This document shows, piece by piece, positions 2,103 through 61,976 of a stretch of DNA of 64,000 nt (the stretch's first letter is position 1; every line of letters starts with the position of its first letter). Position numbers and translations under genes: made by a program. The stretch covers positions 310,001 through 374,000 of the forward strand of contig NIVC01000201.1 in assembly GCA_002269645.1 (NCBI GenBank). The letters run 5' to 3'. This stretch comes from Macrostomum lignano. Taxonomy: Eukaryota. Under the pieces are notes generated by a model. It was given only the letters and a program-made list of their open reading frames with translations. It did no database searches and was not told where the DNA came from.

Positions 2103-4013
2103 TTACTTGATGCAAGGAATGACCAGATAGTCTCCGCCAAAGGGAATTAGAATGGCCTTCTTAGAAGGTTGCAAGTTGGATACAAATGTCTTTGAATGCT
2201 TATAGTAGCCTATGCCAATTGATTTTGATGGATATGGATAGGAATAAAGGCTTCTATCAAATGTGAGAACCTGGCCTGAAATAAGACCATCATTTAAATT
2301 GGTGACAATGACAACCTTTCCATCAACAATAGCACAGTTATTAGGACTCTTATTAGTAAAACCAATGTCACCCAACTTGTCATTAGAATATAAAAATCTC
2401 ACATTCAACAACTGGTTGACAGATTGGGCAAAAACATGATTGGTACAACGAATTCTCTTCTTGATCAATTGCAAGTAGTTTTCAAAAGGGAAAGCTGAAA
2501 ACGTGTCAAGTGGGCCATACATTTGCACAAACTCAGGAAGGTGCAACAGAGCATGCCAATTATAAGAAACTACACTGTTGTAATATAGGCTTGGTGCCTC
2601 AGCAACAAACTTTTTCAAACAAGCCTCAGCAGCATCAAAATAAATTTCACAGTACTCAGGTGAATTAAGGACTGAAATTGACCAATGCAATAATAGATAA
2701 TGATTAAAGTAGACCTTTGGCAAGGTATTCTTAAAAAGGAACGGACCAAAGTACAAAAGACATTGGCGGAATTCCGTTGCTTTAAAGTATTCAATGTCAG
2801 CAAAAGTGCGAAGCCGTCTTTGAAAATCTGAAGGAACAAATTCCTTAATATACATTATTTTTCTATTTATTTCCTCTTTTAATTGGGATGACAACTTGCA
2901 AGCAAGTCGAATGTGCTTTGCTCCAAGGAAGTAAAATTTGAGCAACTTCTTTACAACCCCTAAGTAGACAATATGCATTGGGTCGGGTACAAAATTGGAA
3001 TACATTGGAACAATCCTGGCTAGTGGAGAAATACCAAGTTGGTTATTTTCACGCCCTTGTTCATAATCTTGATTTGTTCGAGCCTCTGCAATGGTATTAG
3101 AAAAACAAATTCTGTCACCTGTGTAATTTCCTACTTGACGACACCAACTACAGCCAAGATAACTGGAATGACCTTTCAAACATTGAATAAAGTTTCTAGC
3201 AGGTGTGTCACAGATAAAGACAATTGACTTAATAAAAATTCTTTTCATATTATAGTCAAAACCATTCTGTAGACCTGCAATTTCAGAACAAAACCTTTCT
3301 AAGAAGACATGTAGGTCAGGCTTTCCAATGCCACAAAAAAGGCCAAATGGCACAGGTCTAAAACAATTATTTACTAGCATCAATATAGGCCAAAGATTGA
3401 TTCTAGATGACTTGAATAAAGGAAGACCATCAACATTTACCCTTAAGGAAACAAAGAAGTTTGTAATTCCAGATGGAATTGTAAGGATTTTGGAATCAAG
3501 TAAAAATTTCAAATTGTCCACAATGGAGAGAAAGGCAACATGACCATTATTGACATTGAACCTCGTGATCTCTGTGCTTGGACACTGCCTCTTAAGCATG
3601 TAGACAGAAGTGGGTATGTCAGTGAAGAAACGAGCCAAAAGCCGAAGTAGGTAATTCATGGCAGCACTAGTAATATTGAATGTTATGTAAAACAATAGTA
3701 ACTCTTGCACCAAAGTAAGTGGCGGAGGTCTATTATAGCCAAGAGAGTCATCTTGTTCTTCAACTTCTTCATCCATTTCTTCCTCAAAAAGAGCATGCAT
3801 TTGGCTATCAAAGTCCATTGGCATTGGACCCACTGCATCAAAGAATGTCTCTTCAGGCTCAGCATTGCTCTTTGTATCTTCATTTTGTCCCATCACATTT
3901 TCTAGATCTAGCCTAGCCTCAATATTTGTAGCCCCAATCGTCGGAAGCTCTTGTAGTATTTCTTGCATTTCCCTGGCTACCTGTCTATTTGATGCACGAC
4001 TTGGCAAAGCCAT
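2103..4013 (-). CDS. CACTA/EnSpm (CMC superfamily)-type DDE transposase, 636 aa, uninterrupted
   Basis: Motifs NVDGLPLFKSS, CDTPAR, CSWC, DPMHIVYLGV, PSDFQRRLR, FKATEFRQCLLY, YNWHALLH and GPLDTFSAFPFENY match the motif order of animal EnSpm-like transposases. Confidence 0.85.
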   Translation of the reverse strand: MALPSRASNRQVAREMQEILQELPTIGATNIEARLDLENVMGQNEDTKSNAEPEETFFDAVGPMPMDFDSQMHALFEEEMDEEVEEQDDSLGYNRPPPLTLVQELLLFYITFNITSAAMNYLLRLLARFFTDIPTSVYMLKRQCPSTEITRFNVNNGHVAFLSIVDNLKFLLDSKILTIPSGITNFFVSLRVNVDGLPLFKSSRINLWPILMLVNNCFRPVPFGLFCGIGKPDLHVFLERFCSEIAGLQNGFDYNMKRIFIKSIVFICDTPARNFIQCLKGHSSYLGCSWCRQVGNYTGDRICFSNTIAEARTNQDYEQGRENNQLGISPLARIVPMYSNFVPDPMHIVYLGVVKKLLKFYFLGAKHIRLACKLSSQLKEEINRKIMYIKEFVPSDFQRRLRTFADIEYFKATEFRQCLLYFGPFLFKNTLPKVYFNHYLLLHWSISVLNSPEYCEIYFDAAEACLKKFVAEAPSLYYNSVVSYNWHALLHLPEFVQMYGPLDTFSAFPFENYLQLIKKRIRCTNHVFAQSVNQLLNVRFLYSNDKLGDIGFTNKSPNNCAIVDGKVVIVTNLNDGLISGQVLTFDRSLYSYPYPSKSIGIGYYKHSKTFVSNLQPSKKAILIPFGGDYLVIPCIK

Positions 4014-5102: not shown

Positions 5103-6326
5103 TAGTCGCTTGATTTTCAGGCTACTGGGAAAAATGCTATGATTTCAAAAGCTCCTTGGGGAATTTTTGAAATTCTTGGGCTGAGAAGGAGTTGCTGAAA
5201 TGCTGTGACTCGGCTGCAGGTTAAGGGTTAGGGTTTGAGTTCAATTATAGAGCCATCGTCGTGTCAATCATAAATGATTCATTAAGGAATTTCTAAGATT
5301 AAAGGCTCTTGGCGCGAATTAGTTATATGCTTTGGCTCTTCGGGAATTGGTGACAGGTCAAGGCTTTCGGTGAAATTTAGATTTCAAAGCTTATGAGGAA
5401 GTTACTTAAATGCTCATGCTCAAGGCTCACGGGGGAGATTGCTAACATGCCAAGACTCACTTATGGGTTAGGGTTAGGGGCTTGGGGTCAGTTTTGGTTC
5501 AATCATAGAATAACCACTCTGTTAACCATCAACAAAGGACTTGCCATCAACTAAAGACTTACTAGATGGGAATTGCTAAGATATCAAAGCTCATGGATGG
5601 AATCGCTGAGTTGACAAGGCTCATGAAGAAATTGCTGAGATATCAAGGCTCATAAGGGGATTGCTGAATTCTTGGGGGAGGGAAGTTAGGTTGTTGGGAT
5701 GTCAAGGCTTACTGGGGGGAATTGGTGAGATGTCAAGGCTTACTGGGGGAATTGCTGAGATGTCAAGACTTACTGGGGGAATTGCTGATATGTCAAGGCT
5801 TACTGGGGAGGAATTGCTAAGATGCCAAGGCTCATGGACTCATGGTTGTTGGGCGATTGTCAGGTAGTCAAGTAGTACGGCTGAAGTAGCTCATGTAATT
5901 CAGATAATGAAATTGTACACACAAGTGATGCTGATTTCTGCTAATAGGAAATACCAGCGCATTTATTAAAGGTTTCATTCTTTGATTTAGGCTAATTAAG
6001 AGAGAGGGTCTAAGGACGTCAATGATTTGCATATTTTCTGCGGATCAGAATATGCCCCGGCCAGCGACGATATGCACTAAGAGTTTGTGCTTGAAAGGAT
6101 CAGCACTATTTGCTGATTGAGAAAGGGTTTTGGGCTGATGAAGGAAACTTTTTTGGCTGTTGAAAGTTCTGATTCATGGCAATTTATTTTTGCCAAAATG
6201 AGAAAAGGTAATTTTTGATTAATGGAAATCAACATTTTGGATAATTATAGTAAGGTTACTCTTGTGTCAAAATAAAAACCAATTGGTGTCATTTTCGGGC
6301 TCCCCAGCGGGGGGCTAAATGGCTAG
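5103..6326 (+). mobile_element. 3' part of a non-autonomous Helitron (plus strand)
   Basis: Hairpin GCTCCCC-agc-GGGGGGC (6299-6315), then 7 nt, then CTAG (6323-6326) followed by T. It contains GGGGAATTGCTGAGATGTCAAGGCTTAC repeats and TTAGGG pieces that are the reverse complement of motifs in the 30555-47642 units. Confidence 0.65.
5698..5832 (+). repeat. 30 bp tandem repeat, about 4.5 copies
   Basis: Unit TGTCAAGGCTTACTGGGGGAATTGCTGAGA. Confidence 0.85.
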
Positions 6327-7681: not shown

Positions 7682-10600
7682 CTAGTCATTAGACAGCACC
7701 TCTGGGTACACAATGTTTCTCGTTCTTTTGCCAGAAATCCGGACACGAATATTGGCTGCGTTTTTGGCCCGAGACAGCGCGGTATATAGCTGACCGTGTG
7801 CAAAGCAGCCGTCAGTCAGTTCGATGCCTACAGTCACCAGCGACTGGCCCTGTGCCTTGTGGATCGTCAAAGAGAAGCTCTCCTTGACCGGGAATTGCAG
7901 CCGCTTGAAGCAGATTGGCAAGTCGGCGTTGCTAGGCTCCAGCGGGATTCTCGGCAGCAAAATCTCCTCCCCAGCAAATTGGCCAGCCGCCACTTTGCAC
8001 CGCAGAACATTTTCTCCCAGCGCCAGGACGATCAACCGACTGCCATTACAGAGAAATGGAGGGCGAATGTTTCTAAGCAAGACAAGAGGCATGCCGACCT
8101 TCAACCTAAGCAAGTGCTTCGGCAGGTTTGGAGCGTCCAGTCCATTAAGTAGCTCCGAAGGGAAATGAGTTGCGGAGTCTTCGTCAGCCACACTGTCAAT
8201 TGACCGGAATTCGCGCATGGCACCGGGAACATGTCCAGGCACTCCTGGTTGATTACATCGACCGACGCGTTGTGCGGGGCCAGGATGGCACGACTTGCAA
8301 AATAACCGTCTCTCTCCTCGGACGCGTCAAACGAAGGGTAGACGAACTTGATCAGGTCCCTTAGCGAAGCGTCCGCCGGCATCAGGATTTCTGCCGGCAG
8401 CGGAATGGAGCCGTCTGCATCCTCTTCGATAGAGCCGCCACCGATCTGCCCAATTGATGGCGATTGTAGTGTCAGAAAAAGTAATTTAAGCATAGTCAAT
8501 AACCTTAAAGGTCCATTCACACCGATATCAAGTGGGGCCAAATTTCGTGTGATCACACGATTTATACATAATTTCTCGTCACATTTTATATCAGTCGTAT
8601 GACGTGATCGCTTGTTTGATGGCGGTGTGAATGGGCCTTAAGCATAAGCATAATCGGTGGAAAATTAGGTAGTACAGATTAACAGCAAAAAAACAATATA
8701 TGACGGTCGATAGTAAAAAAATTTCCGCTTTAAATTTCAATTCCTTAAAAACACAAGGGCAATTAGTAACCCAAAATTGCTCGGGAAATAGATTTGCAGC
8801 TTTCAACTTGCAAAAAATAAGAAAAAATGCAACACCAGTAGTATTTTAAAGCCCAGGACTCACCTGCATCAGCAACTGGGAATACCGGTGGTTCAGCCCA
8901 GAATCATCACCGCTCTGTAGCCGGATATTCCGTGTCAAACGGTGCCGCCGGAACGCATTCCACAGGCCGGACCTGCTGACGCAGGCTTGGACATTGTTGG
9001 TCCGGGTCCCGTTCTTCACCACGGGAAGCAGCTGTCTGAAGTCGCCAGCGCAGACCAACACAATGCCACCGAATGCAGAATTCTGCTTCCGCACATCCCG
9101 CAGAGTCCGGTCCACGCACTCCAAGTCCTGCCGGTTAGTCATGGAGATTTCATCCCAGACAACGAGAGTCGCACTTCTGATGACGGCAGCTTGTCTCGAC
9201 TGAGCACCGACAGAGCAGACATCTTTTTCAGGCCTGACCAACCGAACTGGAATCTTGAATCTGATAAAAGCAATTTTGTGAGGCATTCGTATATCACTGC
9301 CTCCAACTCACTGCTGCAGTCCAACACTAACCATGATGAAAAGAGCAAACTGTTTTGATTTTTTGTAAAAACAATTTCAATGGAAATTGTTTGGATTTAT
9401 AAAAAATGCTAGCATAAACTGACATATTGTACGACCTAATACGAAAATACTCACGTTGAGTGCGCCGTCTGTCCGCCAGGAAGCAAAGTGGCAGCAATGT
9501 CGGATGACGCTACAGCAAGAGCCACTTCACTGTGGCTCCTGGCAAAAGCCAGGAGCACTTCAAGCAAAAATGTCTTTCCCGTCCCCGCCGGTGCATCGAC
9601 AAAGTGCAGGCCGCCGGAGCCACGGTTCAGGTCCGCAGTGACAGCTTCGTACACCGTTCGTTGCTCCTCCGTCAGCTGCGGCACTCGCGTCTCAGTGATC
9701 TCCGCTTGTTCCACCGTGTCGAACTGCAGTGGTCCAACTCGAGGTGCAGCGGTTGCAGCAGTCAGCCCGTATTCCGGCAGGCTACGGCCACCCATTGAGC
9801 TAAGCATGCTCTGCAGCTCCCGCAACGCCATGTCGGTCACCTCTTCGTCGCTCAGGTCTGGGTGGTGGAAGCGCAGGTCCTCGCACATTTCAACAGCAAA
9901 GTTACTCCACAGCTGCTCACCATCGGCCGGCTCGCCCCAGATGAGGATGACGGCCAGCAGGTGCCTCACTGCTCTGGGCATTCGGGACTGCACAGCCTCC
10001 GCCATGCACCTGTGCCAGTGATCGTCTCTCTGCAGCAGACCGAGAGCCATGCAGGCAGCTTTGTAAGTCGGATACGGCACGCCATCGACGGTCCGCAGCG
10101 CCTTGTAGCTGGTCGGTCCCCTCACATAGAGCAACAGAAGACGGAGATAGAAAACATCTCCTGCACGTGGACTGACCGTGTACATTCGCGAGATGTTGGA
10201 GCTCCGCTTGACGCCCGGGTGTCCTGGGACTTCGTTACCTCGCTCAGTTCGGCGCCATTCCCTGACATCCTTGCCGCTGTGCCAGGTGAAGTACGAAGGC
10301 ACCTCGGTGTACAGCAGGGTCCGTGCAAAGGCGTCGCTGGCGCACAGCTTGAAAAAGGCGGTCAGCACCGAATCCCAGGGCGAACTGGCCTTTGACATCG
10401 CAGTTGCCTCATTGAAGAACACTGTCTGCATATCTCTGTCATGCACACAGAGACGAATGACAGCGGGTGATCTGTGGTGCACCTGTTTGAGAAATTTAAA
10501 TTTGGGATAAAAAACCTCTATTAATATTATGGCGAAAAAATCCATAGTAAATATAGCTTCAGTTTTCATTCAAAGCAGTCCCCAACATTAAGAATATGTA

Positions 10601-13600
10601 CGTACATTAACATTGAAAGTACCTTAAAATTCCAACGGCTGCTAAATTTGACTACAGCGGCTGGCTATGATCTTAAGAACCGTTTAAGGCAGATTTTGAG
10701 GGTTTGTATATTCAACTCTGTAGGCTATCCAAGTATAATTTTGAGAATCCTTTAAGAATTCCGCTTATGGTGTTCCCCAACAGAAATGTTCAACACGAAA
10801 CTCACTTCAAATCTCAAAATCGTTTTCACTGCCTCCATTGGGCCGATATAGCGGGCAGTCAAGTACTCAGCGATCTCATCACGTCTTCTTGGAGATCCGG
10901 CACCCTGGTCATGCTCTTGATTTGCAGACTGCTGCCCCGAATGCGCAGCGTCCTGAGCTTGGGTCACCGTGAAGGTCGCCATGTCACCGCCTTTCAGAAG
11001 ATACTTGATGATGTACTTGACACTTTTAACTGTAGCACACACTTCCACGTTCATGTGGCAGGCGAATTCCAGCATCAGCTTCGGATTGTAAGGTACGACA
11101 GACCTGGTTAGGGAGCAAGTGAGAGAAGAATCAGAAATTGGGATGGGTAAAAAGTAAGAACGAATTCATTCTATCTCTGAAATGGAAGATGGAAAACAAT
11201 TTCCAAAGATCAAATGTATCGCATAGAACTTAAGAAAGCGTGCACTGAAATCAAGAGACTGAAAATATCTGTATATATATTTATTATATATAGATATATT
11301 TATTATATATAGATATATTTATTATATCTATATATATTAATATATATCTATATCTATGTATATTAATTCATTAATTCAATTACAAATAACCAACCGGTTG
11401 TCCATGCGAATACTGCGACCTTTCAGAGTCTTGTAAAGCTCGAATCCGCCCATTTCTGGAGATCGCCTTCTGTAGAACGGGTACCCATAGTCATTTACCA
11501 TGGTGGCTGGCACAAACTCCTTGGGATACCCCTTAGTACACTGTCCGTTCTCCATGCAGGGACATCTCGGATTGTCCTTTCCACACGGGCCGTGCATCAT
11601 GTGCGTCTTGACCAGCTCGTGCAGCACCGGCTGGGTTTGAGGATCGGGAATCTCCGCGCACACGATTTCGTCATAGCGGTCCGGAGTAACGCCATGTCCA
11701 CTCTTCATCCACAGCAGAATGTGGACATGCGGAAGGCCTGAGTTAGATTGCGAACGATACAATCTATTAGATGGATCAAGCTTTCACTTTATTACTCAAC
11801 TAATTTTAAATCCGTACAATTAATTCAGTAGACGAACTTTGAAAATAGCCAGAATCATCATCAAAGCAAAAATTAAGCATTTCAAATCTGCATTCCCCAA
11901 TTGTACATGACAAAAAGCAAGGTCTCTGAAAAAATTGAACTTGAATCGTCATATTTAAAAAACTGTGTTCTGAAAACGTTCAAGAATACAAATTTATTAT
12001 TATATGCTTGAAAAAACGTCGTGATTTGTTAAAATGAAAATTAATAAACAATCTAATGCGAAATTAAGATCAAATCGCTGTCTACTCACCCCGCTTCTGG
12101 TACTCCATTGAGCAAACATGCGCAACTACAGGTCCGAAGCACTTCTTCAACCGGGCAAGCAGGGCCTTCTTCTTCAACTCAAAGACACGACTGACTACGT
12201 CCGGCCTGTCCTCGGGCTTCTGTCCAGGCTGCAACTCCGCGCTTATTTCTGACCACTGTGGGTTACAGGTGGCAGTTACGAAGAGGTTCGGTTTGCCGAA
12301 TTTGTGGACGTAGGTCATGGCGTCCTGCAGCCTCTCCATCATGTACCGAGGCCCGCCAGTGAAAGTTAAAGACAAAATCACCGGCTTGCCGACATCATTG
12401 GGGTCGGTGCCTTTGTCCAATCCGTCCGCGGCAAACAGAGCGTCTCGCAGACCGCTGTACGTTTCGCTGCGAAGCTTCTTCTGATTCAGGCGCTGGTAGT
12501 TAAGCCGCTCACACTCGATCTTCGCTGCCTGGTCAACCAGGTACTGCTGGAACAGGCGTCGGCTGTGGTGCAGCGCGTTGAACTGGCCAGGCCGCACCAT
12601 AATCTCGCTGGCGTAATACGCCCGGACCGAGAGTTTGTCGCCGTTTTTTTTCTTCAGATCTGGGACCCAGCCATCCTCACCAAAAGGCAGCAGCAGCACG
12701 TACTGCAGTGCATCGTAGGATCGATGAGTAACGGAAACTCTGCGAATCTGGCTCAGGTCCCCGCGAAGCCGAATCACAACGTCCCGAGAGCTTGCAGGTT
12801 CATCAGCGCCAACCACCAGGATTCCGACTTCATTGGCAGTGGGCACGTTGTAACGCCTGGGAAAAGTTGTTCGAAAGCAACGCATACTTCGTTAGTAAAA
12901 TTATGTATGCACAAAATTATTTGTTCTTACTAAAAGCACACAGTTTTCACTTGAATTCTCTCTTGCGTATGAGAGAAAGAAAGTATTGAAGAAATTGACT
13001 AAAATAACCAAGTGAAACAGGTTAAGAAACACACTTGTAAACAAAAGCACAGAGCAATAATTAGTCACACAATTTATCAATTTAATCAGAAATAAAAAAA
13101 TGACTAAATTAATGAATAAGCAGACTCACCCAGTGTGCTCTCCCTGTGGGCGTCGTTCTGGGCGAATTAGAATTCGCGCCTCACCAAGCTGCGGCTCCCT
13201 GGCGATGTGCTCCGCTGCAGTCTTCAGGCTCCGCACATCGTAGCCGTTGCAGCTGTGCAGCAGGTTCTGCAGTAGCTGCAGTAGTTCTGGCTGCAGATTC
13301 TGGCTAATGCTTAGTCGGCTCTCCAGTTCGCGGTCCATGAAATATACCTGCCAACCGCGGGGTGCAGCTGATTCCTCAGCATACAAAGTCGGGATGTTGT
13401 GGTGGATCTCCCCACTGAGGATGAAGCTGGGACAGTAGCCCCGAATAGGCCGCAAGTTCGCTGCCAGCGTAGTAAGATGGAGTGCCGAATTGTAGTTGCG
13501 AATGTTGGCCAGAAATGCAGGGCTCAGCGGATGGCGTCCAACGTACAAATCCTGCATAACCGGCGGCACAGTCTTTGTTGGCAGTTGCACCTGGCCGCTG

Positions 13601-15702
13601 GAACAGCAGATCCCAACCGGCTCAAGGTCCCAACGCACTGCGCCACAGTGCTGACAGGGCTTGCTCATGCGGCCCAACTGATGCGTCTGTACTGCAGGCA
13701 TGGCTGCGAACTCCGGCCTGTGTTCAGCAGTGCAAATTTAAGTTATAGCTCAAATTTCTTTACTTCAGTTTATTACTACGATTTTTCCTAATAGGTTCCG
13801 TACACCACACATCAACTACTTTCTACCACACATCTACCACTTTCGCACAAAGTGGAAATAATATATACGCTGTTTTAATTGCTTAAAGTTGAAGATTTGT
13901 TCACAGCAAAGAGCTTTAGTTTCGTGATGAAATTAGAAGTAAAACAAAATCCATTAAGAATTAGAGTCACTCACTCGGCGTCCTCATCGGTGAACTCTGT
14001 TTGATAAGCTGCCGCACCGACGCCAGGTTGACCGAGGTCCCATTCAGGCGGTGCCTGGTTTGCCTGGTAGTCCGAGCTGCCGAAGCTGCGGTAAGGAGTT
14101 GTTCATAATCGTTCAGAACTTATCAAACGGAGACACCAAATTAAAATCCTTGCTACAGTCATGCAGCCGTGAGATACAAAGCAACTAATTTCGGGAATTA
14201 AAAATCTAGGGCATGAAAATTATAAAAGAATACTGTCCCATAACAATGCACAACATTTTTTTATAGTTAGGAAAAATAGCAACAATTCACCCAGTGTCTT
14301 CAGCTGAATAGTCAGGAGCCGCTGAGGCAAAACTGGCACCAGTCAGCTCTGAACTGCCCATTGCATCAGACGAAGACAAATTTCTCGAATCTTGCATACT
14401 ATTTTTTCAACGAGGCAAGAGAGGCAACGAGATAAGATTATGCAGGTACTGAACGCCGCATTACATTTTAAACAAAAATTACGTGCTTTGTCAGTTGCAT
14501 TTACCTGGAAGAAGCTGCAAAGTGCAGAGAATCGTAGTGTTCTCCTAGCCGATAGTACAAAAGCCAGACAGAAGCAACTGCAGGCCTGATGACAGCTGAA
14601 GCTGCACAAATCAACTGCAGCTGGCCTTCCCGCTGCTCATCAGCTTGGTAGACAGCAAAGTCCACATCCAGCAGTTCATGCAGCTTCGGCACAATGAACT
14701 CGTGGACGTACACACTGTCGCGCCGAGTGTATTGCAGCACTTGATCCACAGTCAGGTTGCTAGCTGCCAGCAAGACGGACTGCTCTTCGAGCACAGGCCC
14801 TGCCCGATCAGCAATAACTTGCCGCAGCTGCCTGTGGTCCATGGCAATTGGTGTGCCCCTCAGCTGATCCTCGAGAGCATGGAACCAGCAGTTCCCATCA
14901 CCAGGCATTCGAGACACTCGAAATGTACCCCTTGGAACACTATCGGGCGGTGTGGTGAAGCTGCAGCTGTGGGTTTAAGCAAAAATTGTTTGTTTAATTG
15001 TCTATAACTTGTTGTCTATAAATCGTTCAATATTAAAAAGCACGTTGAACCCGTTGTCATGCTTAAAATATTAAATACATTGATGCAGTTCCACTATTGC
15101 CCTTTAAAATGAAAATACTATTATACGTCACTTAGCTGCCAATTAAAGCCCTCCCAATTTGTAAGAAAACAGAAAACATTAACCTCACTGGATAGTTAAT
15201 AAATTAATAAAACTGCAACAGAAATAGTTAGCCAAATTTCAAACGGAAAAGCATCTTACCTGATGGTCTGTCGTTCCGGCCCTTGAGAAGCTTCATAACG
15301 CAACCGATTCAACCTCAGTCGCTCATTTCGCTGCAAATCATTTTCCTGGGCCATTCGCCGGCTCCAACACTCTTTCGCAGCTTGCAGACGGACGGCTCGC
15401 TCAGCCGCAGACTCTCCGGATCTCCGCTGCTCCGAGCGCTTCTTCTCAGCCTGGAGCCTGACGTCTCGCTGGGCTGCGGATTGGGCCCCCCGCTGTCTTT
15501 GCTGACTGTCTCGTTGTGCCAGCAGTCGCTGCTCTCGTGCTTCAGCCGACTCAGCCGCAGACACGGCAGCCCGCTGTCTTTGCTGACTCTCTCGTTGTGC
15601 CAGCAGTCGCTGCTCTCGTACTTCAGCCGACTCCTGATGTCGCCGTTTCTTCGCCTCGCGGCTTTTTTGCAAAGCACTTTTGGCACCACGAAGTTTCGGC
15701 AT
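7682..15702 (-). CDS. Helitron Rep-helicase (coiled coil + OTU protease + Cys-rich region + HUH Rep + PIF1-like SF1 helicase), 11 exons, about 1754 aa, with one frameshift near 8225
   Basis: Exons by eye, all GT-AG: 15702-15260, 14966-14505, 14353-14291, 14085-13975, 13717-13130, 12856-12090, 11737-11395, 11103-10806, 10482-9455, 9260-8864, 8445-7682. Total 5264 nt, +1 nt = 1755 codons. Motifs: EYQKRG/LPHVHILLW (HUH), VKYIIKYLLKG (catalytic Tyr), DAPAGTGKT (Walker A), WDEISM, GDFRQLLPV, TIHKAQGQSL, HGQLYTALSR, RNIVYPEVL. Confidence 0.92.
14505..14966 (-). other. OTU-like cysteine protease domain exon within the Helitron protein
   Basis: PGDGNCWFHALEDQL ... GEHYDSL, the Cys-box and His-box signature of OTU deubiquitinases. 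The exon is in phase with both neighbouring exons. Confidence 0.85.
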
Positions 15703-16585
15703 TATTTTTTCGTTCGAAAGGAGTAAAGTACGTACAATATAGCAAATGAAATTAGAATAAAAAACAATCGTAGTACTACGCCCCTACAATCTACAGAACA
15801 GTACGAAAAGGATATGGTATGATTGATAGGAAAGTACGGTACTGTAGTTTTTTAAATTAACGAGTAACGTATCTTTAATTAATTTAGCTAAGAGGTGGTT
15901 GCGGATTGCAAATAACAGTCACGCAGTGAAAAGTCAAATTGAAAACGAAGTTGAGCAAATTTTACTAATTTTTCGCTTGATATATACCAGCGTTAGCCAG
16001 ATAAGAATATAGAAAAAAAGATGCATGGAAAGCGTACACTGAATTCTAAATAAATCAGCTAGAGAACGGATTGTAGCAATACCCCTTCATTCAGTTAATT
16101 AAAAGGGTCTGTGTGCAGGTCAATGTGTACATATTCAATAGGTTGGGTGAGCCTACAGCCAATCAAATAGACTTCTCACACCCACCCCATCAATTCTCAC
16201 ACCCATTAATCATTCCGTCTGCAATTTTCTAACCATTGTGCAGTGTACAGAATGAATGTGCAGTGCAGCAAGAAGGCAGGTAGCTATGAGCAATGCCGAT
16301 ATTTCATAATGGTTGGCTTGTGTAGCTGTCAAATAGATCGATAATTGGGGTTGACGCACTGGAGAGAGAGAGTGATAAAAATGTACGCGGAGATGAATTA
16401 GGGGTAGTAAAATGGCGTGATGTGTTCAGGTGAGTGTACGCACCTACACCCTGAAAGGCAGATTAATAGTATCGCATTTTCAGAAAGCGTATTTAACAAT
16501 GGCCTCGTCAACCATTTTTCATCTTGCGAGAATTCACATACTTTTGATCGCATAAAATTCTACTCATACTAAGTAACGATAGAAG

Positions 16586-17835
16586 ATGAAAATTCTTGAT
16601 GTAAGAAATTGCACGAAGCTAACGACTCCCTTGCGGGGAAAAATTCTGGTTCGGAATGAGGTGAGCTGCACTTTTAGTTTCTTCGCTTACTTTTGCACAA
16701 TAGTCAATTAAATTCACAATAGTCAATTAAATGCACAATAGTCAATTAAATGCACAATAGTCAAGAAAACAATACTACTGTAATTTGTAGGTGAAAATCA
16801 ACTCAAAAATTTTTCCTGACCCCACATTTGTTTAGATTCGGTCCTACTCAAACCGTAGTGGCCCCGGCACTTTGTTCTCGGCCCTTCTGATCGACGAGAC
16901 AGCTGAGATCAAAGTGTGTTTTTTCGGACGTAACCTTAACGATTCGTGGCAGAAGTGTACCGAGGGGAACGCTGTAAACCTTCACGGCGTTGAAGTGAAG
17001 ACAGCGGATCAGCGCTACAACTTTGCTGAGAACCTTTTCGAGCTAAATGTCAATGTCGACAAAGGTGGTTTCGTTGAAGAAGCGGAAGACTTCGTGTGTT
17101 CACCGCACTACAGATTCCACCCGATATCAGAGCTAGCCACAATTGGGACTAATGGGTGAGAATTCTTATGTCAAAATTATATTCTTGTGTCTATATCTAT
17201 AACTCTATCTATCTATCCATCTATCCATCTATCCGTCTATCCATCTAGCTATCTATCCACTTCTCAATGTGTCTTACCCATTTATCTATTCAAGATTTGA
17301 CTTTGAACCCCATTTCTGATCCTAGCGTTCGCGTCGACTTGCTGGGGGTAGTAATATCGACTGCTGGTCCGACCGACGTCCAGACAAGAAATGGTCCTAC
17401 GCAAAGGACTGGCGTTGTCTTGGCAGACAACAGTGACCGTACAGCCCTCTGTACGTTCTGGGGACGGCGAGCCGTTCAGGTGTCCTCGTGGCACATCAAT
17501 TCTATTGTGGCAATCAAGGGGGCGCGAACAAGTGACTACGATGTCCTCTCGCTTAGTTGCTCCTCCGTCTATTGTGTCCTGGATCCCGACGGAGTTGACC
17601 TCAGTGAGCTGCAAAAATGGCGTGAGGAACGAGCAGCCAAAGAATTGATGCCCGTTGCTGCCTCTCGCCAGCCGCAAATCGACGATGCGATTTGCATCGA
17701 CGTGCCCAGCAGCGTCAAACGGGTCCGCATCCGTCGGGGAAATATCGAGGTAAGGCTCAATATTTAACTCAATTCAATTTAGTATGCATGCTCTTCCTGT
17801 CATAGCCAACAGAACCAGCTTCTTCACAAAACTAA
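16586..17835 (+). CDS. RPA70-like single-stranded DNA-binding protein (two OB folds), 4 exons, about 282 aa
   Basis: Exons 16586-16660, 16836-17155, 17326-17749, 17806-17835 (849 nt, in frame). IRSYSNRSGPGTLFSALLIDETAEIKVCFF resembles RPA70 DBD-A. VDLLGVV...LADNS...CTFWG...VAIKGARTSDY...LSCSS resembles DBD-B. Confidence 0.85.
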
Positions 17836-18558
17836 CAGAGGACGATCGATCTCAACGATTCGGAGCCACAGAGTTCACAGTGAGTAATCGAATACTTTCA
17901 TGCCGTTAGAATTTGCGTTGCGGGTATCAAGGAGCTACAATATAAAAATTTTAACGAATCACAAATCTTACTTGCAGACAAAGCGACACGTCATTCTCCT
18001 CTCAGTGAACGATGTACGGCGAACATCGGTGAAGATGTACGATGTACGGTGAAGAGTGAAAGCTGATAATAAAATAAAAGCTGAATAAAACTGTTCTGGA
18101 TAAGACTATTTACCTTCTGTCTTTTTCACTTACGTATATCCATCTGTCGTTGTGTCAGCTCATGCCTGTCTGTCCGTCTATATATAAATTGTACAGCAAC
18201 AATCATTCCAGTCTCCCCAGAAGTGTAAGATTCTCCCCAGATTAGCACCGCTCCCCAGATTAGTAATGCTCTCTGCAAATTAGCACATGGGAGGAGACTT
18301 CATTATTGTCAAAATTCTGCAGTTCTCCTCCCGGCTGGCTCCTCAGTCTCCTCAGCAAACTTGCAATAGTCCATTTATCTATTTAAAAATTTCTCAGCAT
18401 TTAGTACGACTCACTAATCAGTACTCGATACATAACTACACCAATATCTTATCTATTCTATATCTATATCTATACTCGATCATAGGATTTAGCTATGCCT
18501 TCAGCAGTTTAGCAGCATTGTCTGCAGTTTAGCAATTTCATGCTTAAATGCAGGCAAC

Positions 18559-18708: not shown

Positions 18709-18929
18709 CAGGCAACACCCATTGATGAGATCAGTAACACTCAAAGCAGTTTACAAATCAAATTTGTTTAGTGGCTTGTGCCGATTAGCGAAAATATAAG
18801 CACAAGCCACTAAGCAAACGTAAAGCAAACTACGTAATAAAAATGTTTCAATCGCTATTAATAGACAGACGTTTCAATTAGTCGATGCAGAATTTAGAAA
18901 AAAATAAATTCATGCAATTTAAATTATTC

Positions 18930-19515
18930 GCAGCGAGGTGGACTCGAACCTGGGACCTTACGCCTAGCCTAAACCTAGTGCCTACATGCGGCTACTCCGC
19001 CTATTGATGGAAAGGCGAGAAAATCAGCCATATTAGCTTCGACACTGCAGTCAAATACATAGCAGTGATGGGCTGCTCAGTGCGCAGGCAGAGCCAATGC
19101 ACAGTTGAGTGAAATCTATAAATAGCAATTGTCTATGCAGTCCGCCATTCAGCTAGGGTCAGAGGAATGTACAAACAGCCACTGAGCATTTTTTCTCTCC
19201 CTTGCACACTGTAGCCAGTATTGAAACTTGGAGAAAAAAGTTATGGCGCAATCTCAATTGGAGTTTCAATTCAGTCAGTCGAGATTTTGACCTTTTCTAG
19301 CCTCCCATTAAAAGCATAAGGAAAACTCGTTTTTCGAATATTTAATCCACTTAGCACGGAAGCAAATATTTGAAAATTTTTAGGTACAATCCTTGAAAAA
19401 ATTTGCAGGTTTAGAAAAAAACGCGATCAAATTTGTTTGAGGCATTCAGTATTAAATGCGTCATTCACAAACAGACAGACAACACAAACAAAGGTAGGAC
19501 TTTTAGTATATTAGA
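18930..19515 (-). mobile_element. Helitron 5' terminal region, with a tRNA-like segment at about 18930-19000
   Basis: The minus strand reads A|TCTAATATACTAAAA from 19515, followed by a TTTG/TCTG microsatellite. It is similar to the 5' ends at 33102, 37281 and 47642. B-box GGTTCGAGTCC at about 18940-18950. Confidence 0.65.
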
Positions 19516-20245
19516 TTTTGATTTGATTTTTAGTATATTGGAGGACGAGGCAAACTCCTCCTTCGGAGAAGAAAGGGTAAGAACTCCCATCACCGGAATT
19601 CCATTCCCTGAACTCCATCAGCTGAATCCCATGACCCAACTCAATTTCAGTAAAAGTATCACGAAGCAGTTGACATAATCAATTTCTTAAGTCAGTAGGC
19701 ATCAGTCTCAATTTAGTGAATATGGTTACGCAATCTAAATCAACCCTCTAATGCACACTCCCCGCCGATACACAGCAACCCCTCATTTAATGCATTTAAT
19801 GCATTTGAACCGCCCTTGAAGTTCACTGCCCAGTTAATACACAGAGCTGCCTTTTGAAAGGCACCGATAATAAAACTAATTGATCAATAGATGGCGCCTT
19901 CGTTATCTCAGTCAGTCAGTATAAGTCTCACTTAACTTTAATATAAAGTTACGCAATGTAAATTAACCCTCCAATACACAGTGACTCCAATGCACATTGG
20001 CAGTTAGAAATTGAACACCTTCACTTTATATTTGACCTTTACCGAAGATGAGTACAATCTGTGCTCAGTTAGAACTCCATCCCATCTAGAATCCCAGCTT
20101 TGAAGCTTAAGTCTGGCACATGTAGTAACGTAATTTTTTTATTTGCATGAAAAAACTGCACTTTCATGGACAAGGGCGAGGCAAATAATGCAATGAAATT
20201 ACAGGCATAAAAATAAACAAAAACATATTTACAGTATATTCTATT

Positions 20246-21274: not shown

Positions 21275-22488
21275 TTTCGACTTATACTCGTAGTTCAAAA
21301 CAATATGCAATACAGTTGACTGTTGATTGATGACTGATAATTGGGGCTGATTTTGCGATCTTGTATTTATAGGCGCGGTTTGGGGTGAGAACTGGTGTGA
21401 CTGGTTTTGTGAGTTGTCTGCCAGATGGATTCATTCCAGTTCTCAAAAGACTTAACACCTGCATTTGATCAGCATATTGGTGAGTGAATAAAATGTATAT
21501 AAGCTGGTGTGGAGAGTCTCACAATTTAATTAGATTTACATGAACTGAAACCTTTCAATTTGACTTAAAATGTTGCGCAACACAGTTGATTGGTCATTCT
21601 AAAGTTCTCACATTATTGGTTAGCTTACTGAAAACTTTTGATTGGCTAAACTTTTAAGCAAGCTTTAAGGCTAGAGTACAATGTCTGGGGTTGACTGTTT
21701 TGGGTTTGGAAGTCTCTATAGAGTAGAATTCAAGTGCTCACTGCCAACTGAAGTTTATGCGAATCAAACTTTAGGAATATGATTCAGCGTTAGGGTGCGA
21801 TTGCAGCTTAAAATGTTCTGCTACGGCATTCTCTGTTAAGAGCTTAGAGTTCACAGTCAGTCTAAAATTGTGATAATCTAAAGTCTGTGATAGACCGCCA
21901 CGTTGCGCAAATCATTATTTGAATGAATCACTCTGTAACAGCTGGTTTGCTACTCATTCTCTGCCAATTCACTGTAAAGCAGTTTAAACGTGCGAAAAAC
22001 TGATTGGCTGCCCGTCAGCTATAGCAATCACGCAGGCACTGTACATCTTAGTGAGAATGGAGGAAAAAGTACCAAAACTAATTTGTATAGCTGCACTGAA
22101 TTACAACTTCTTGACTCCTTCAAATACTTATGTTGCTGCGTTCCTTTACAGCTAGCTGAATGCCCCTACTCGAATTCCTTCACCCCTGTTGAATAAAAAA
22201 ACTAATTCAAAGACATCATTGGGGGGGGGGTACGCAGGAAACGATCGAATAACCCACTGGTCCACATGACCTCAAACGACGTCGAATCAAGCAGTCTACC
22301 TCGATTTGACTATATTCTGGTGTTTCCAACAATTTTTTTATAAAAAACCATCACTGTTATGTCGAATGTGTTAAAAACATAGATTTTGTTTGAAATTAAA
22401 ATGAAAAAGTATGACGTAATGACATCGTATCCATGCCGTAAAGTAGGACCTCGTTTGTACGATATAACTTCGATAAGAAGTACATATG

Positions 22489-22846
22489 AAACATTCGCCG
22501 ACACTTATTCAGACACTTTAGTTTCTGTCGTACGAATCGTAGGAACAAGCATTAAATTTGTTTATTCCTAACAAACTATCAGTAAAATGCTTTATTTTAA
22601 GCTTTTTGCTTTATTTTATTAAATATGAATTAGGAAGTGTCCTGGACAAATTTAACATTCTTCTTCACGTGAAGAGAATCTATGCAGAATAACAAATTTC
22701 ATGATTCATATTTAATAAAATAAAGCAAAAAAGCTTAAAATAAAGCATTTTACTGATAGTTTGTTAGGAATGAACAAATTTAATGCTTGTTCCTACGATT
22801 CGTACGACAGAAACTAAAGTGTCTGAAAAAGTGTCGGCGAATGTTT
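22489..22846. mobile_element. Foldback/MITE-like element with about 142 bp near-perfect inverted arms
   Basis: 22489-22630 is the reverse complement of 22704-22846 (AAACATTCGCCGACAC...ATATGAAT / ATTCATAT...GTGTCGGCGAATGTTT), with a 73 bp spacer. Confidence 0.85.
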
Positions 22847-22854
22847 AATACGTA

Positions 22855-48769: not shown

Positions 48770-51700
48770 GCATCAGCAAGCAAGCAGCCCAGACCTGCCC
48801 TACACCAGGCCCCATTTTTGCACCTGTTGGACCAGGTAAAATATGGCCGCAATCTGCCAGCCCTGCTGTGCCAGCGACCCACGCAGACCATCTGCAACCT
48901 GTCAGAGACTGAGCTGCTCCACGGGCCCGAGTTCTCCAGCATGCGGCTGCCGTTTCAAGTCGGCAGCAGTGCAGGCAGCAGTGCTGATGGTCCCGAATCC
49001 AGCTGGCCCATCCAGCTGCTGTCTATGGCCGAGTTTTCCAGCTGCCTAGCAACTCAGAAGAGCCCCCACCAGAGCACCTGGCTGTATGCCTCCTATATCT
49101 ACCTGCACCCGGGTGCGTCTCCTCCGGACCCTCAGCTGGCCAAGATTCGCGAACGCATCGATTGGTCTGGTCTGGGCTTTGACAGAGGCTTGGCAGCCTG
49201 CGGCAGCACGCTGTGGATTGGGGGTCCAGGGTCCAAAACCAACCTGCACTATGACGCTTATGGTTACAATATTGTGTTTCAGGTTTGTTTAACACCTTTA
49301 ATATAGCTTTAACACCAGTGATATCATGCTCAATCATTATTTGGCATTCTGGACTTGAACAATTCCATGCGAAATAAAAGTCAAGGTGACCAATACTTGC
49401 ATCACGTAAAATTCTATTTGCGACCAATTTTCACTAGGGGAAGGGGAAGCTGGCATCGCAGGCACAGAGTCCGCATATCGATGCCATAAAAGACTTGAAT
49501 TGTTGTGTGACGTGTTCCACTATTAATTACTACCTACCGGAGTGTTTCACTATTAATTACTACCTACCGGAGTGTCCCACTATTAATTACTATCTACCGG
49601 AAGTGTTCCACAATTAATTAATATCTACCGGAAGTGTTCCAAAAGTAGTTACTACCTACCGGAAGTGTTACAATTAATTACTACCCACCGGAAGTGTTCC
49701 ACAATTAATTACTATCTACCGGAAGTGTTCCACAGTTAATTACTACCTAATGGAGTGTTCCACTATTAATTACTACCTACCGGAAGTGTTTCACAATTAG
49801 TTACTATCTACCGGAAGTGTTCCAAAAGTAGTTACTACCTACCGGAAGTGTTACAATTAATTACTACACATTGGAAGTGTTCCACAATTGATTATTACCT
49901 ACTAGAAGTTTTCCTAAGTGATTATTGCTAACCATTTTCTCTCGGAAACCCAGGTGTTTGGCAGCAAACGATGGACCCTCTACCCGCCTGAGTCCAGCCA
50001 CCTGCTCAGGCCTACCCGGCTGCCATTCGAAGAGTCCACCATCTTTTCCCGTCTGTCCGCCCCCGCCTCCGTGCCAGAGGCGCGGCCTCACAGCGTCACC
50101 CTGGAGCCCGGCGACCTGCTGTACGTGCCGCGCCACTGGTGGCACCGGGTTGAGTCCCTGGGCGACTCTGCCAGCTGCTCCGTTAACCTGTGGGTGCCGC
50201 TGCCTCACCTGGACGCCGCCTCTCGGCTCGGCGAATCCCTCGCCGGCCTGATGGTCCGCCTGCTCAGCTCGGCTCCGGCCGCTGCCCAGCTGCTTTCAGA
50301 GACGCGCTGGCGCTGCCGGGACGAGTCGGACAGGCGACACTGGAGGCGGCTGACTGGCGGCGCCGACGTCTGGGGACCCGGCGAGCTGAAGCGGGACCTG
50401 GCGACTGCCCAGGAGGCGGCTGCGGCTGCTGCGGATGCCGAGGCTGAAGCGGCGTCTGACTGCGACTGCGACTGCCGACTCTGCGGCACCGGGGACCAGG
50501 TAGGACTGGCAGTTGACTGGCAGACTGGCAGCCCTCTGCCTGCTCCTGACACCCTCTGCCTACTCCTGACACCCTCTGCCTGCTCCTGACACCCTCTGCC
50601 TGCTCCTGACACCCTCTGCCTGCTCCTGACACCCTCTGCCTGCTCCTGACACCCTCTGCCTGCTCCTGACACCCTCTGCCTACTCCTGACACCCTCTGCC
50701 TACTCCTGACAGCCTCTGCCTACTCCTGGCACTATCTGCCTACTCCTGACACTATCCGCCTACTCCTGACACCCTCTGCCTACTCCTGGCACTATCTGCC
50801 TACTCCTGACACTATCCGCCTACTCCTGACACCCTCTGCCTACTCCAGACAGCCTCTGCCTACTCCTGACACCATCTGCCTACTCCTGACACTATCTGCC
50901 TACTCCTGACACCATCTGCCTACTCCTGACACTATCTGCCTACTCCTGACACCATCTGCCTACTCCTGACACCCTCTGCCTACTCCTGACACCCTCTGCC
51001 TACTCCTGACACCATCTGCCTACTCCTGACACCATCTGCCTACTCCTGACACCATCTGCCTACTCCTGACACCCTCTGCCTACTCCTGACACCATCTGCC
51101 TACTCCTGACACCATCTGCCTACTCCTGACACCCTCTGCCTACTCCAGACAGCCTCTGCCTACTCCTGACAGCCTCTGCCTACTCCTGACACCTCTGCCT
51201 ACTCCTGACACCATCTGCCTACTCCTGACACCCTCTGCCTACTCCTGACACCCTCTGCCTACTCCAGACAGCCTCTGCCTACTCCTGACACCCTCTGCCT
51301 ACTCCTGACACCATCTGCCTACTCCAGACAGCCTCTGCCTACTCCTGACACCATCTGCCTACTCCTGACACCATCTGCCTACTCCTGACACCATCTGCCT
51401 ACTCCTGACACCATCTGCCTACTCCTGACACCATCTGCCTACTCCTGACACCATCTGCCAACTCCTGACACCATCTGCCTACTCCTGACACCATCTGCCT
51501 ACTCCCGGCGCAGACATCCCCTTCATTGTAGCTACTTTGAATTCTGCCAACCAATCAAACACTTCTAAGTTATCTGGTGCCGGCCCTACTCCACATCACC
51601 GCAGTCTGTATCGGAGTTTGTTTCTGCCTCCGGCGTCACCGTAGCGTCCCTGAGTCCAGACGCGGCGCCCGTCACTTCGCCACCAGCGCTTCGGCAGGGG

Positions 51701-51807: not shown

Positions 51808-51904
51808 GATTGAGCTGATTAATGACCAAAATGCGCGTGATGAGGTTTGTCAATCCTCTACCATTGCCACTCCGTTACTCTGCCCTGTTACTGTTCTGTC
51901 CTTC

Positions 51905-61923: not shown

Positions 61924-61976
61924 GGCTATGACTGACTGACGAGGGCAAACAAGCCCGAAACCGGTCTCAGTCTGCC
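61924..61976 (+). ncRNA. Type I hammerhead ribozyme, copy 1
   Basis: Stem I GACTGA/TCAGTC, core CTGACGA, stem II GGGC-AAACAA-GCCC, GAAA, palindromic CCGG, and GTC cleavage triplet (cut predicted after 61966). Confidence 0.9.

What the first reader, a model, noticed from the sequence alone, without database searches (positions are those of the whole stretch)
16586..17835. RPA70-like ssDNA-binding gene divergently paired with an animal Helitron transposase
Seen: a compact 282 aa protein with two OB folds, lacking the RPA70 N-terminal and C-terminal Zn domains, head-to-head with Rep-helicase across about 880 bp and inside the candidate 5' end at 19515. Known: RPA-like genes are typical of plant Helitrons and much less commonly described in animal ones. 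Inference: a self-contained rolling-circle module (HUH Rep + helicase + OTU + SSB) on a bidirectional promoter.
Basis: partly seen in the sequence, partly recalled or inferred. Interest (0 to 1): 0.72.

Follow-up and report, generated by a model that had tools for sequence, protein, structure and literature searches.

The report
Flatworm Helitron carrying its own RPA-like gene

Summary
A GT-AG spliced gene on the + strand (16586-17835) encodes a 276-282 aa protein made of RPA70 DNA-binding domains A and B. It has no N-terminal domain and no zinc-bearing C domain. It lies 883 bp head-to-head with an STPR-like/OTU/Rep/PIF1-helicase gene on the - strand.

The Helitron 5' end at 19515-19542 is supported. 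It matches termini defined from multiple copies in Macrostomum lignano, and it abuts the 3' end of another Helitron. The RPA-like gene therefore lies inside the element.

In M. lignano, three related canonical Helitron families (RepHel about 70-80% identical) carry homologous short RPA-like genes. All 10 loci examined have the gene inside or next to Helitron parts. There it sits downstream of the helicase, on the same strand in two families and the opposite strand in one. The window protein groups with these (300/300 bootstraps).

This is a Helitron gene, but the divergent pairing is specific to this lineage and a bidirectional promoter is untested. This copy is not self-contained: the helicase has a 1-nt frameshift near 8218 and no 3' terminus was found. 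RPA and OTU genes in animal Helitron-like elements are already published. Verdict: new member of a known kind, modest interest.

The parts
16586..16660 (+). RPA-like gene, exon 1 (25 codons, first strand of OB-A)
   Evidence: ATG followed by an AATGAG|gtgagc donor. Residues 12-25 align with M. lignano RPA-likes and with human RPA70 from residue 201.
16836..17155 (+). RPA-like gene, exon 2 (OB-A, equivalent to RPA70 DBD-A)
   Evidence: Acceptor ttgtttag| and donor |gtgaga. AlphaFold pLDDT 87; Foldseek best matches 1FGU, 4GOP_C and 1JMC. F55 and Y86 align with RPA70 F238 and F269.
17326..17749 (+). RPA-like gene, exon 3 (OB-B, equivalent to RPA70 DBD-B, plus a conserved but disordered C-terminal tail)
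   Evidence: Phase-2 intron placed between the two OB folds, as in the M. lignano genes. Pfam REPA_OB_2 3.8e-13. Foldseek to 4GOP_C and 1FGU, E 1e-7. W177 and Y203 align with W361 and F386.
17806..17835 (+). Optional exon 4 (9 codons plus stop). The alternative is read-through of the 17749 donor to the stop at 17765-17767.
   Evidence: Splice sites are present. The read-through end EVRLNI resembles the relatives' E[IV]xFSRD. RNA data are needed to decide.
18068..18089 (+). Three AATAAA signals about 230-255 nt after the stop codon
   Evidence: Read directly from the sequence.
15703..16585 (.). 883-bp divergent intergenic region (38% GC); putative promoter(s), untested
   Evidence: It holds only one TATATA, one CCAAT and one ATTGG, and no Helitron terminus motif.
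15260..15702 (-). RepHel exon 1: Arg/Gln-rich repeat region, STPR-like
   Evidence: ORF. Weak Pfam STPRs hit, E 0.012. Homologous region present in all M. lignano families. Donor CATCAG|gtaaga.
14505..14966 (-). OTU cysteine-protease exon (DGNC ... HYD motifs); acceptor uncertain within 14930-14966
   Evidence: Pfam OTU 1.8e-5, above the curated cut-off. Splice candidates.
13130..13717 (-). Cys-rich N-terminal (zinc-finger-like) exon of RepHel
   Evidence: 57-60% identical to M. lignano copies. No Pfam hit, DUF6570 included.
12090..12886 (-). Rep exon (Helitron_like_N)
   Evidence: PF14214, E 2.3e-48.
11384..11783 (-). Rep exon carrying the HUH motif (HVHILLW)
   Evidence: ORF translation. 73% identical to M. 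lignano.
10806..11165 (-). Rep exon carrying the catalytic tyrosine pair (KYIIKY)
   Evidence: ORF translation. Homology.
9455..10482 (-). Helicase exon with Walker A motif (GTGKT)
   Evidence: PIF1 1.5e-18. 76% identical to P0001.
8864..9260 (-). PIF1 helicase exon, preceded by a 194-nt GT-AG intron (9261-9454) that M. lignano lacks
   Evidence: PIF1 1.1e-34. blastn homology breaks exactly at 9455 and 9260. Splice sites.
7682..8445 (-). Last helicase exon (2B domain and C-terminal part), with a net 1-nt deletion near 8218 that shifts the frame
   Evidence: Two overlapping ORFs. Alignment to the continuous M. lignano ORF. The M. lignano copies keep one frame across this point.
19502..19515 (-). 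Helitron 5' terminus, A|TCTAATATACTAAA, followed by (TTTG)n-like sequence
   Evidence: 14 of 14 match to the copy-defined 5' end of M. lignano family A. 4 matches at up to 2 mismatches in the window against 0.74 expected, all on the - strand.
19529..19542 (-). Second 5'-terminus motif (TCCAATATACTAAA), 27 nt outside the first and directly abutting the neighbouring Helitron's 3' end
   Evidence: The true 5' end is either 19542 or 19515.
19543..19877 (-). 3' terminal region of a different, upstream Helitron (hairpin CTTCTCC-GAA-GGAGGAG followed by TTTGCCTCGTC)
   Evidence: 77-92% identical to the 3' ends of the M. lignano L009-L011 elements. Homology stops at the junction.

Best explanation
The gene is an accessory single-stranded-DNA-binding gene of a canonical (HLE1-type) Helitron from a flatworm-like genome.

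The element runs on the - strand from a 5' TC terminus at 19515-19542. It encodes one spliced transposase (STPR-like repeats, OTU protease, zinc-finger-like region, HUH Rep, PIF1 helicase; 15702 to 7682). Between the 5' end and the transposase, on the opposite strand, it encodes a 276-282 aa protein. That protein consists only of the two high-affinity ssDNA-binding OB folds of RPA70 (DBD-A and DBD-B) plus a short tail conserved within its clade.

Inferred mechanism. During rolling-circle ('peel and paste') transposition, Rep nicks the 5' end and the helicase unwinds the transposon strand. The element's own mini-RPA then coats the displaced strand or circle intermediate. Because it lacks DBD-F and DBD-C, it should bind ssDNA without joining the RPA32/RPA14 trimer and without recruiting the host checkpoint and repair partners of RPA70.

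Shown here: domain identity, conserved base-stacking aromatic residues, location inside the 5' terminus, and membership of a Helitron-borne flatworm clade.

Inferred only: ssDNA binding, a role in transposition, and co-regulation from the shared 883-bp region.

This particular copy is probably inactive. It has a helicase frameshift and no 3' end was found.
For: Domain identity. The four RPA70 stacking residues are conserved as aromatics (F238/F269/W361/F386 correspond to F55/Y86/W177/Y203). They are invariant between the window protein and M. lignano P0121.

Transposase: Helitron_like_N, PIF1 and OTU hits; HUH, YxxxY and Walker A motifs read from the ORFs; GT-AG introns at every junction.

Relatives:
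- RepHel is 70-80% identical to M. lignano Helitrons.
- Their termini, defined by comparing copies, are A|TCTAATATACTAAAG... and ...CCCCGAAGGGGGG-N11-CTAG|T.
- The window's 5' end matches these and abuts another Helitron's 3' end.
- In M. lignano, 10 of 10 RPA-like loci from three families lie within or next to Helitron parts. This includes deletion derivatives that lost RepHel but kept RPA (L017, L018, L019).
- The window RPA's best matches among 1.84 billion representatives are these short flatworm proteins. Together they form a clade in 300 of 300 NJ bootstraps.
- All share an intron between the two OB folds and a C-terminal motif that host RPA1 lacks.

No Helitron terminus on either strand separates the RPA gene from RepHel.
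Against: No other copy from the window's own genome could be examined, because that genome is not in the searchable collections. Co-mobilisation is therefore inferred from another species.

The 3' terminus is missing from the window and the helicase is frameshifted.

The RPA-like protein is only about 30-33% identical to the M. lignano ones, while RepHel is 70-80% identical. OTU is likewise only 31-37%.

Gene position and orientation differ from all three related families, so a rearrangement, a separate acquisition or a mis-assembly is possible.

The NJ clade could be inflated by long-branch attraction.

There are no expression or biochemical data.
Confidence: 0.75

Rival explanations
1. The RPA-like gene belongs to a second Helitron in the opposite (+) orientation. 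This could be an RPA-only 'semi-autonomous' element like the rice Mothra mother element, or the 3' part of a RepHel-RPA element. It would be nested in or fused to the 5' region of the - strand element, so the head-to-head pairing would be an accident of insertion.
For: In M. lignano families A and C the RPA gene sits just upstream of the 3' terminus on the same strand as RepHel. An inverted fragment of such an element would look like this. Helitrons in this window and in M. lignano are often nested or arranged head-to-tail. RPA-only derivatives exist (L018; Mothra, PMC4683698).
Against: No + strand hairpin-CTRR 3' terminus lies between 17835 and 19700. No + strand 5' motif lies between 14000 and 17000. 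No - strand terminus lies between 19515 and 15650. Family B shows that an oppositely oriented RPA gene can be a stable internal part of one element: three copies, with both termini seen in L022.
Confidence: 0.1
2. The gene is a passively captured host-gene fragment with no function for the element. Helitrons capture host genes frequently.
For: Gene capture is a hallmark of Helitrons. HELIANO's authors suggest that the accessory domains are not essential and stem from ancient captures (PMC11417382). The accessory gene evolves much faster than RepHel.
Against: The four-exon ORF is intact with canonical splice sites. All four DNA-stacking aromatics are kept. Homologues are retained with open frames in at least four diverged Helitron families and in deletion derivatives. 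The clade-specific conserved tail and the strict trimming to DBD-A/B recur in mite Helentrons (PMC4067079).
Confidence: 0.1
3. It is a host (domesticated or paralogous) RPA1-like gene that merely lies beside a Helitron. Alternatively, the inverted arrangement is an assembly artefact.
For: Copy number in the source genome is unknown. This copy of the transposon is defective. The region is extremely repeat-rich, which invites mis-assembly.
Against: The gene lies 1.7 kb inside a 5' terminus that is itself bounded by another Helitron's 3' end. Its closest relatives are all Helitron-internal. The nearest full-length RPA1s are protist and fungal rather than animal, so there is no sign of a recent host paralogue.
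Confidence: 0.05

Closest known systems
Macrostomum lignano Helitron families with short RPA-like genes (P0121/Mlig000690 family A; P0131/P0279/P0281 family B; P0284/P0134 family C; assembly GCA_002269645.1). They are annotated only as hypothetical or 'Replication protein A OB domain-containing' proteins.
   Same: Same transposase architecture (STPR-like, OTU, Zn finger, Rep, PIF1) at 70-80% identity. Same 5' TC...ATATACTAAA and hairpin-CTAG 3' termini. A two-OB RPA-like gene of 246-370 aa with an intron between the OB folds and a shared C-terminal motif. One clade with the window protein.
   Different: The RPA gene lies downstream of the helicase: same strand in families A and C, opposite strand in family B. 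In the window it is upstream and head-to-head. Protein identity is only 30-33%. The window gene has an extra intron after codon 25.
Helentron (HLE2) RPA proteins, for example the mite Helentron-Mo-1A ORF2 (358 aa; RPA1 DBD-A plus DBD-B only) (PMC4067079)
   Same: An animal rolling-circle transposon with a separate small gene made only of RPA70 DBD-A and DBD-B. OTU protease is also present in that group. HELIANO finds RPA upstream of RepHel in HLE2 (PMC11417382).
   Different: The window element has canonical Helitron features: a TC 5' end and relatives with hairpin-CTAG 3' ends inserted at A|T. It lacks an AP endonuclease, a DUF6570 hit, subterminal inverted repeats and T-T insertion.
Plant Helitron RPA-like proteins (PHRPA; Kapitonov and Jurka 2001; rice Mothra study, PMC4683698)
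   Same: Canonical Helitrons carrying an RPA70-derived ssDNA-binding gene. In trees the proteins form their own clade apart from host 'core' RPA1. RPA-retaining, RepHel-less derivatives exist.
   Different: The plant genes lie downstream of RepHel. That clade was reported to be restricted to monocots and dicots. No direct sequence comparison with plant PHRPAs was made here.
Human RPA70 (RPA1) DBD-A/DBD-B (PDB 1JMC, 1FGU)
   Same: Two tandem OB folds, about 27% identity over 215 residues, with all four base-stacking aromatic positions conserved.
   Different: No DBD-F and no flexible linker. No DBD-C zinc ribbon or trimerisation helix, so it cannot be a subunit of a canonical RPA heterotrimer.

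Membership tests
RPA70/RPA1 ssDNA-binding core (DBD-A plus DBD-B OB folds) | Two tandem OB folds homologous to DBD-A and DBD-B | tested here: met
   phmmer to 1FGU, 1JMC and 8RK2 residues 201-416, E 1.6e-17. REPA_OB_2 3.8e-13. AlphaFold plus Foldseek top hits are RPA70 A/B structures.
RPA70/RPA1 ssDNA-binding core (DBD-A plus DBD-B OB folds) | Aromatic base-stacking residues (human F238, F269, W361, F386) | tested here: met
   They align with F55, Y86, W177 and Y203. These positions are invariant against M. lignano P0121.
Canonical cellular RPA1 orthologue (RPA heterotrimer large subunit) | N-terminal DBD-F and C-terminal zinc-containing DBD-C with trimerisation region | tested here: not met
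   The protein is 276-282 aa and the alignment covers only RPA70 201-416. No other Pfam domain is found and the last ~35 residues are disordered. It groups with Helitron-borne proteins rather than ~600 aa RPA1s.
Canonical Helitron (HLE1) | RepHel protein with HUH motif, paired catalytic tyrosines and a PIF1-type helicase | tested here: met
   PF14214 2.3e-48 and PIF1 1e-34. HVHILLW, KYIIKY and GTGKT motifs in the ORFs. However, the last helicase exon is frameshifted in this copy.
Canonical Helitron (HLE1) | 5' terminus TC, inserted after a host A | tested here: met
   A|TCTAATATACTAAA at 19515 is identical to the copy-defined M. lignano terminus. A second motif at 19542 abuts another Helitron's 3' end.
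Canonical Helitron (HLE1) | 3' terminus CTRR preceded by a GC-rich hairpin and followed by a host T | tested here: inconclusive
   Present in M. lignano relatives (CCCCGAAGGGGGG-N11-CTAG|T) and in non-autonomous elements in the window. None is found on the - strand downstream of this element's helicase within the window.
Helentron / Helitron2 (HLE2) | C-terminal AP endonuclease fused to RepHel (Helentrons); DUF6570 marker; T-T insertion with subterminal inverted repeats | tested here: not met
   The helicase ORF stops at 7682 with no Exo_endo_phos or DUF6570 hit. None of the 120 closest helicase homologues carries Exo_endo_phos. Termini are TC/CTAG. The weak STPRs hit is an HLE1-associated domain (PMC11417382).
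Helitron-borne accessory RPA-like gene | Lies inside the element's termini and travels with it in independent copies | tested here: inconclusive
   Inside the 5' terminus in the window. Met in 10 of 10 M. lignano loci across three families. Other copies in the window's own genome and the window element's 3' end could not be examined.

The most novel reading that the evidence does not exclude
In flatworm Helitrons the mini-RPA gene is a required but positionally free cassette. It has moved or inverted within the element at least twice: downstream on the same strand, downstream and convergent, and upstream and divergent. This might happen through template switching during rolling-circle replication. 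In this lineage it has come to share a bidirectional control region with the transposase, so that SSB and RepHel are made together. By lacking DBD-F and DBD-C, the protein hides the ssDNA intermediate from host RPA-dependent checkpoint signalling.
Probability: 0.15. Interest if true: 0.55.

Novelty: new member of a known kind. Interest (0 to 1): 0.3.

Why it matters
No one has shown experimentally what Helitron-encoded RPA-like proteins do. The only reconstituted Helitron I know of (Helraiser, from bats) has none; this is from my own knowledge. A compact, intact two-OB protein with conserved DNA-contact residues would be a convenient test case for whether these transposons supply their own ssDNA-binding cofactor. 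It belongs to a young, multi-family flatworm Helitron lineage whose termini are well defined. The three different gene positions across close families also show that the accessory gene is retained through rearrangements. That argues for function rather than passive capture. Beyond this the finding is ordinary: it extends a documented pattern to flatworms.

Tried and rejected
- Word-indexed protein search with the spliced 282 aa protein found nothing.
- The window's own ORFs have no identical entries in the protein collection. Copy number and co-occurrence in the source genome could therefore not be tested.
- The element's 3' end was sought by three methods: a family-pattern regex, a 26-mer with up to 7 mismatches, and a generic hairpin+CTRR scan on the - strand from 7690 to 1. 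None gave a convincing site. The only nearby 3' end (6302-6326) is on the + strand and belongs to a separate non-autonomous Helitron with 30-bp repeats.
- A nested + strand Helitron around the RPA gene was rejected for lack of termini.
- Helentron classification was rejected: no endonuclease, no DUF6570, and TC/CTAG ends.
- The 41-nt 'intron' that could bridge the helicase frames (8153-8193) was rejected. It would delete residues conserved in M. lignano, where the ORF is continuous.
- M. lignano family D (L009-L011) has no detectable RPA-like gene within 10 kb.
- ARAGORN found no tRNA near the B-box-like sequence at about 18940.
- The bacterial promoter scan was not used because it does not apply to eukaryotes.
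- The first NJ bootstrap run timed out and was redone with 49 taxa.
- The HELIANO supplements are not held, so I could not check whether flatworms were in that survey.

Full report
OBSERVATION

Pfam REPA_OB_2 scores 3.8e-13.

The spliced protein could not be submitted to the structure tools, so the exon 2 and exon 3 products were modelled separately. Both fold as OB barrels (pLDDT 87 and 75). Their best PDB matches are RPA70 DBD-A/B structures 1FGU, 1JMC and 4GOP_C. From the alignment, the four base-stacking aromatics of RPA70 (F238, F269, W361, F386) correspond to F55, Y86, W177 and Y203.

Nothing corresponds to DBD-F or the zinc DBD-C, and the last ~35 residues are predicted disordered. The final exon is the weak point of the model. 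Reading through the 17749 donor ends the protein at ...GNIEVRLNI* (stop at 17765-17767). This resembles the E[IV]xFSRD continuation in relatives. Three AATAAA signals lie at 18068-18089.

THE NEIGHBOURING TRANSPOSASE

On the - strand, ORFs from 15702 down to 7682 encode the following:
- an Arg/Gln-rich repeat region (weak STPRs hit);
- an OTU protease (PF02338, with DGNC and HYD motifs);
- a Cys-rich region;
- Helitron_like_N (E 2.3e-48);
- the HUH motif HVHILLW and the tyrosine pair KYIIKY;
- a PIF1 helicase with Walker A motif GTGKT.

Every ORF junction has a strong GT-AG intron in the right phase, and most breaks coincide with breaks in M. lignano copies. These are therefore introns, and OTU is an exon of the transposase rather than a separate gene.

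One intron (9261-9454, 194 nt) is absent from M. lignano, where the ORF is continuous.

The last helicase exon carries a net 1-nt deletion near 8218 relative to the M. lignano sequence. All M. lignano copies keep a single frame there. Unless this is a sequencing error, this copy's helicase is broken. The two start codons are 883 bp apart.

RELATIVES AND ELEMENT BOUNDARIES

The closest helicase homologues are from the flatworm Macrostomum lignano and from Logan assemblies that carry the same M. lignano-type element (76-77% identity).

A profile of the window protein and the Logan RPA-like ORF retrieved P0121, an M. lignano 334 aa protein with at least 8 genomic copies. Six such loci (L013-L018) show the order N-term, OTU, Rep, helicase, RPA-like, all on one strand. 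Comparing copies defines canonical Helitron ends: A|TCTAATATACTAAAGTTGAG... at the 5' end and ...CTCCCCGAAGGGGGGTCAACTATTGCTAG|T at the 3' end. Deletion derivatives that lost part or all of RepHel keep the RPA gene (L017, L018).

The window's - strand has TCTAATATACTAAA at 19515, preceded by A and followed by (TTTG)n-like sequence as in M. lignano. At up to 2 mismatches the window holds 4 such motifs against 0.74 expected. All 4 are on the - strand, and two of them directly follow a hairpin-CTAG 3' end.

Twenty-seven bases further out, a second motif (19542) directly abuts the 3' terminal hairpin region of a different Helitron. That region is 77-92% identical to the ends of M. lignano L009-L011, and the homology stops at the junction.

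The 5' boundary is therefore at 19515-19542, and the RPA gene lies about 1.7 kb inside it. No terminus motif on either strand lies between the RPA gene and RepHel.

The 3' end was not found. The only nearby 3' terminus (6302-6326) is on the + strand. It belongs to a separate non-autonomous Helitron with 30-bp repeats.

IS THE RPA GENE A HELITRON GENE?

A full HMMER scan of 1.84 billion representatives put short M. lignano proteins first: P0131 (370 aa), P0132 (298 aa), P0134/P0284 (246/303 aa) and the P0121 family. The ~600 aa cellular RPA1s ranked below them.

In an NJ tree of 49 DBD-A/B regions, the window protein plus these M. lignano proteins form a clade in 300 of 300 bootstraps. The nearest long RPA1s are protist and fungal rather than animal. 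Long-branch attraction cannot be excluded.

The clade shares an intron between the two OB folds. It also shares a C-terminal motif absent from RPA1.

Genomic context of the other families:
- Family C (L019) has helicase, RPA and 3' end on one strand.
- Family B (L020-L022, three copies) has the RPA gene about 3 kb downstream of the helicase on the opposite strand. Both termini are visible in L022.

So 10 of 10 M. lignano RPA-like loci are Helitron-internal, and the gene's position and orientation differ between families. The window's upstream, head-to-head layout is a fourth arrangement.

The low RPA identity (30-33%) is matched by the OTU exon (31-37%), whereas Rep and helicase are 70-80% identical. 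Fast evolution of accessory parts explains this as well as separate capture does.

CLASSIFICATION AND LITERATURE

The following place the element in canonical Helitrons (HLE1) rather than Helentrons or HLE2:
- TC/CTAG termini with a 3' hairpin and A|T insertion in the relatives;
- an STPR-like N-terminus;
- no AP endonuclease;
- no DUF6570.

The literature already covers this kind of arrangement. Thomas et al. 2014 described animal Helentrons encoding a 358 aa RPA with only DBD-A and DBD-B, together with OTU (PMC4067079). HELIANO (2024) found RPA and OTU in both HLE1 and HLE2, with RPA typically downstream in HLE1 and upstream in HLE2, and OTU upstream in both (PMC11417382). Plant Helitron RPAs form their own clade, and RPA-only derivatives exist (PMC4683698). 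I found no paper describing Macrostomum Helitrons in detail.

MECHANISM (INFERRED)

The protein keeps exactly the part of RPA70 that binds 8-10 nt of ssDNA with high affinity. It drops the parts that build the heterotrimer and recruit checkpoint and repair factors; this is established RPA biology. The most likely role is coating the displaced transposon strand or circle produced by Rep nicking and 5'-3' unwinding. The conserved tail is a candidate RepHel contact.

A shared promoter in the 883-bp spacer is possible but unsupported. The spacer has no notable motifs, and the layout is not conserved.

VERDICT

The element is a defective copy of a canonical flatworm Helitron. The kind is already known, and only the head-to-head placement is new. 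Interest is modest.

Noticed in passing
window 27000-48000 (junctions at 30555, 33103/33102, 37282/37277, - strand): The large 22-23-bp minisatellite region consists of non-autonomous Helitrons arranged head-to-tail (...CCCCAACGGGGGGCGTAGATTGCTAG|TCCTATATACTAAAAATG...). Their termini are almost identical to those of M. lignano family B. These are tandem-repeat-carrying Helitrons building satellite-like arrays.
   Followed up: partly
window 5157-6326 (+ strand): A separate non-autonomous Helitron on the + strand, with a 30-bp tandem repeat (5526-5836) and a hairpin-CTAG 3' end at 6302-6326. It is 80% identical over 831 nt to M. lignano L017 4708-5524. This degree of non-coding conservation suggests the source species is close to M. 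lignano.
   Followed up: partly
window 9261-9454 (- strand): A clean 194-nt GT-AG intron interrupts the helicase exon in the window but is absent from all M. lignano copies. This is an intron gain or loss inside a transposase gene.
   Followed up: partly
window 2103-4013 (- strand): An intact 636 aa ORF with only a weak DUF4218 hit (E 0.009). It looks like a transposase of another DNA transposon superfamily. Not characterised.
   Followed up: no
P0130 (Calicophoron daubneyi CAL8082275.1): A 4022 aa trematode 'protein' with 26 separate matches to the RPA-like profile. It is probably a mis-merged tandem array of RPA-like (Helitron?) genes. This hints that such genes are widespread in flatworms.
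   Followed up: no
L014, L015, L017, L020, L022 (M. lignano) and window 19542/19543: Helitron 3' ends very often abut the 5' end of the next Helitron with no spacer, even between different families. This suggests tandem or end-targeted insertion in these genomes.
   Followed up: no
window 15489-15552 and 15570-15633: A 64-nt direct repeat (97% identical) inside the first transposase exon. It encodes the repeated AEAREQRLLAQR(E/D)SQQRQR peptide of the STPR-like region.
   Followed up: no
window 22481-22607 / 22728-22854; 50393-51272; 51808-52544; 61781-63250: A 127-nt inverted repeat (97% complementary, 120-nt spacer) that looks like a foldback or MITE. A GC-rich 20-bp tandem array and a 13/16-bp tandem array. 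A 390-bp tandem repeat with 100% identical copies.
   Followed up: no
window ~18925-19000 (- strand): A sequence with a tRNA B-box-like GGTTCGAGTCC lies between the RPA gene and the 5' end. ARAGORN calls no tRNA here. It may be a SINE or tRNA-derived remnant.
   Followed up: partly
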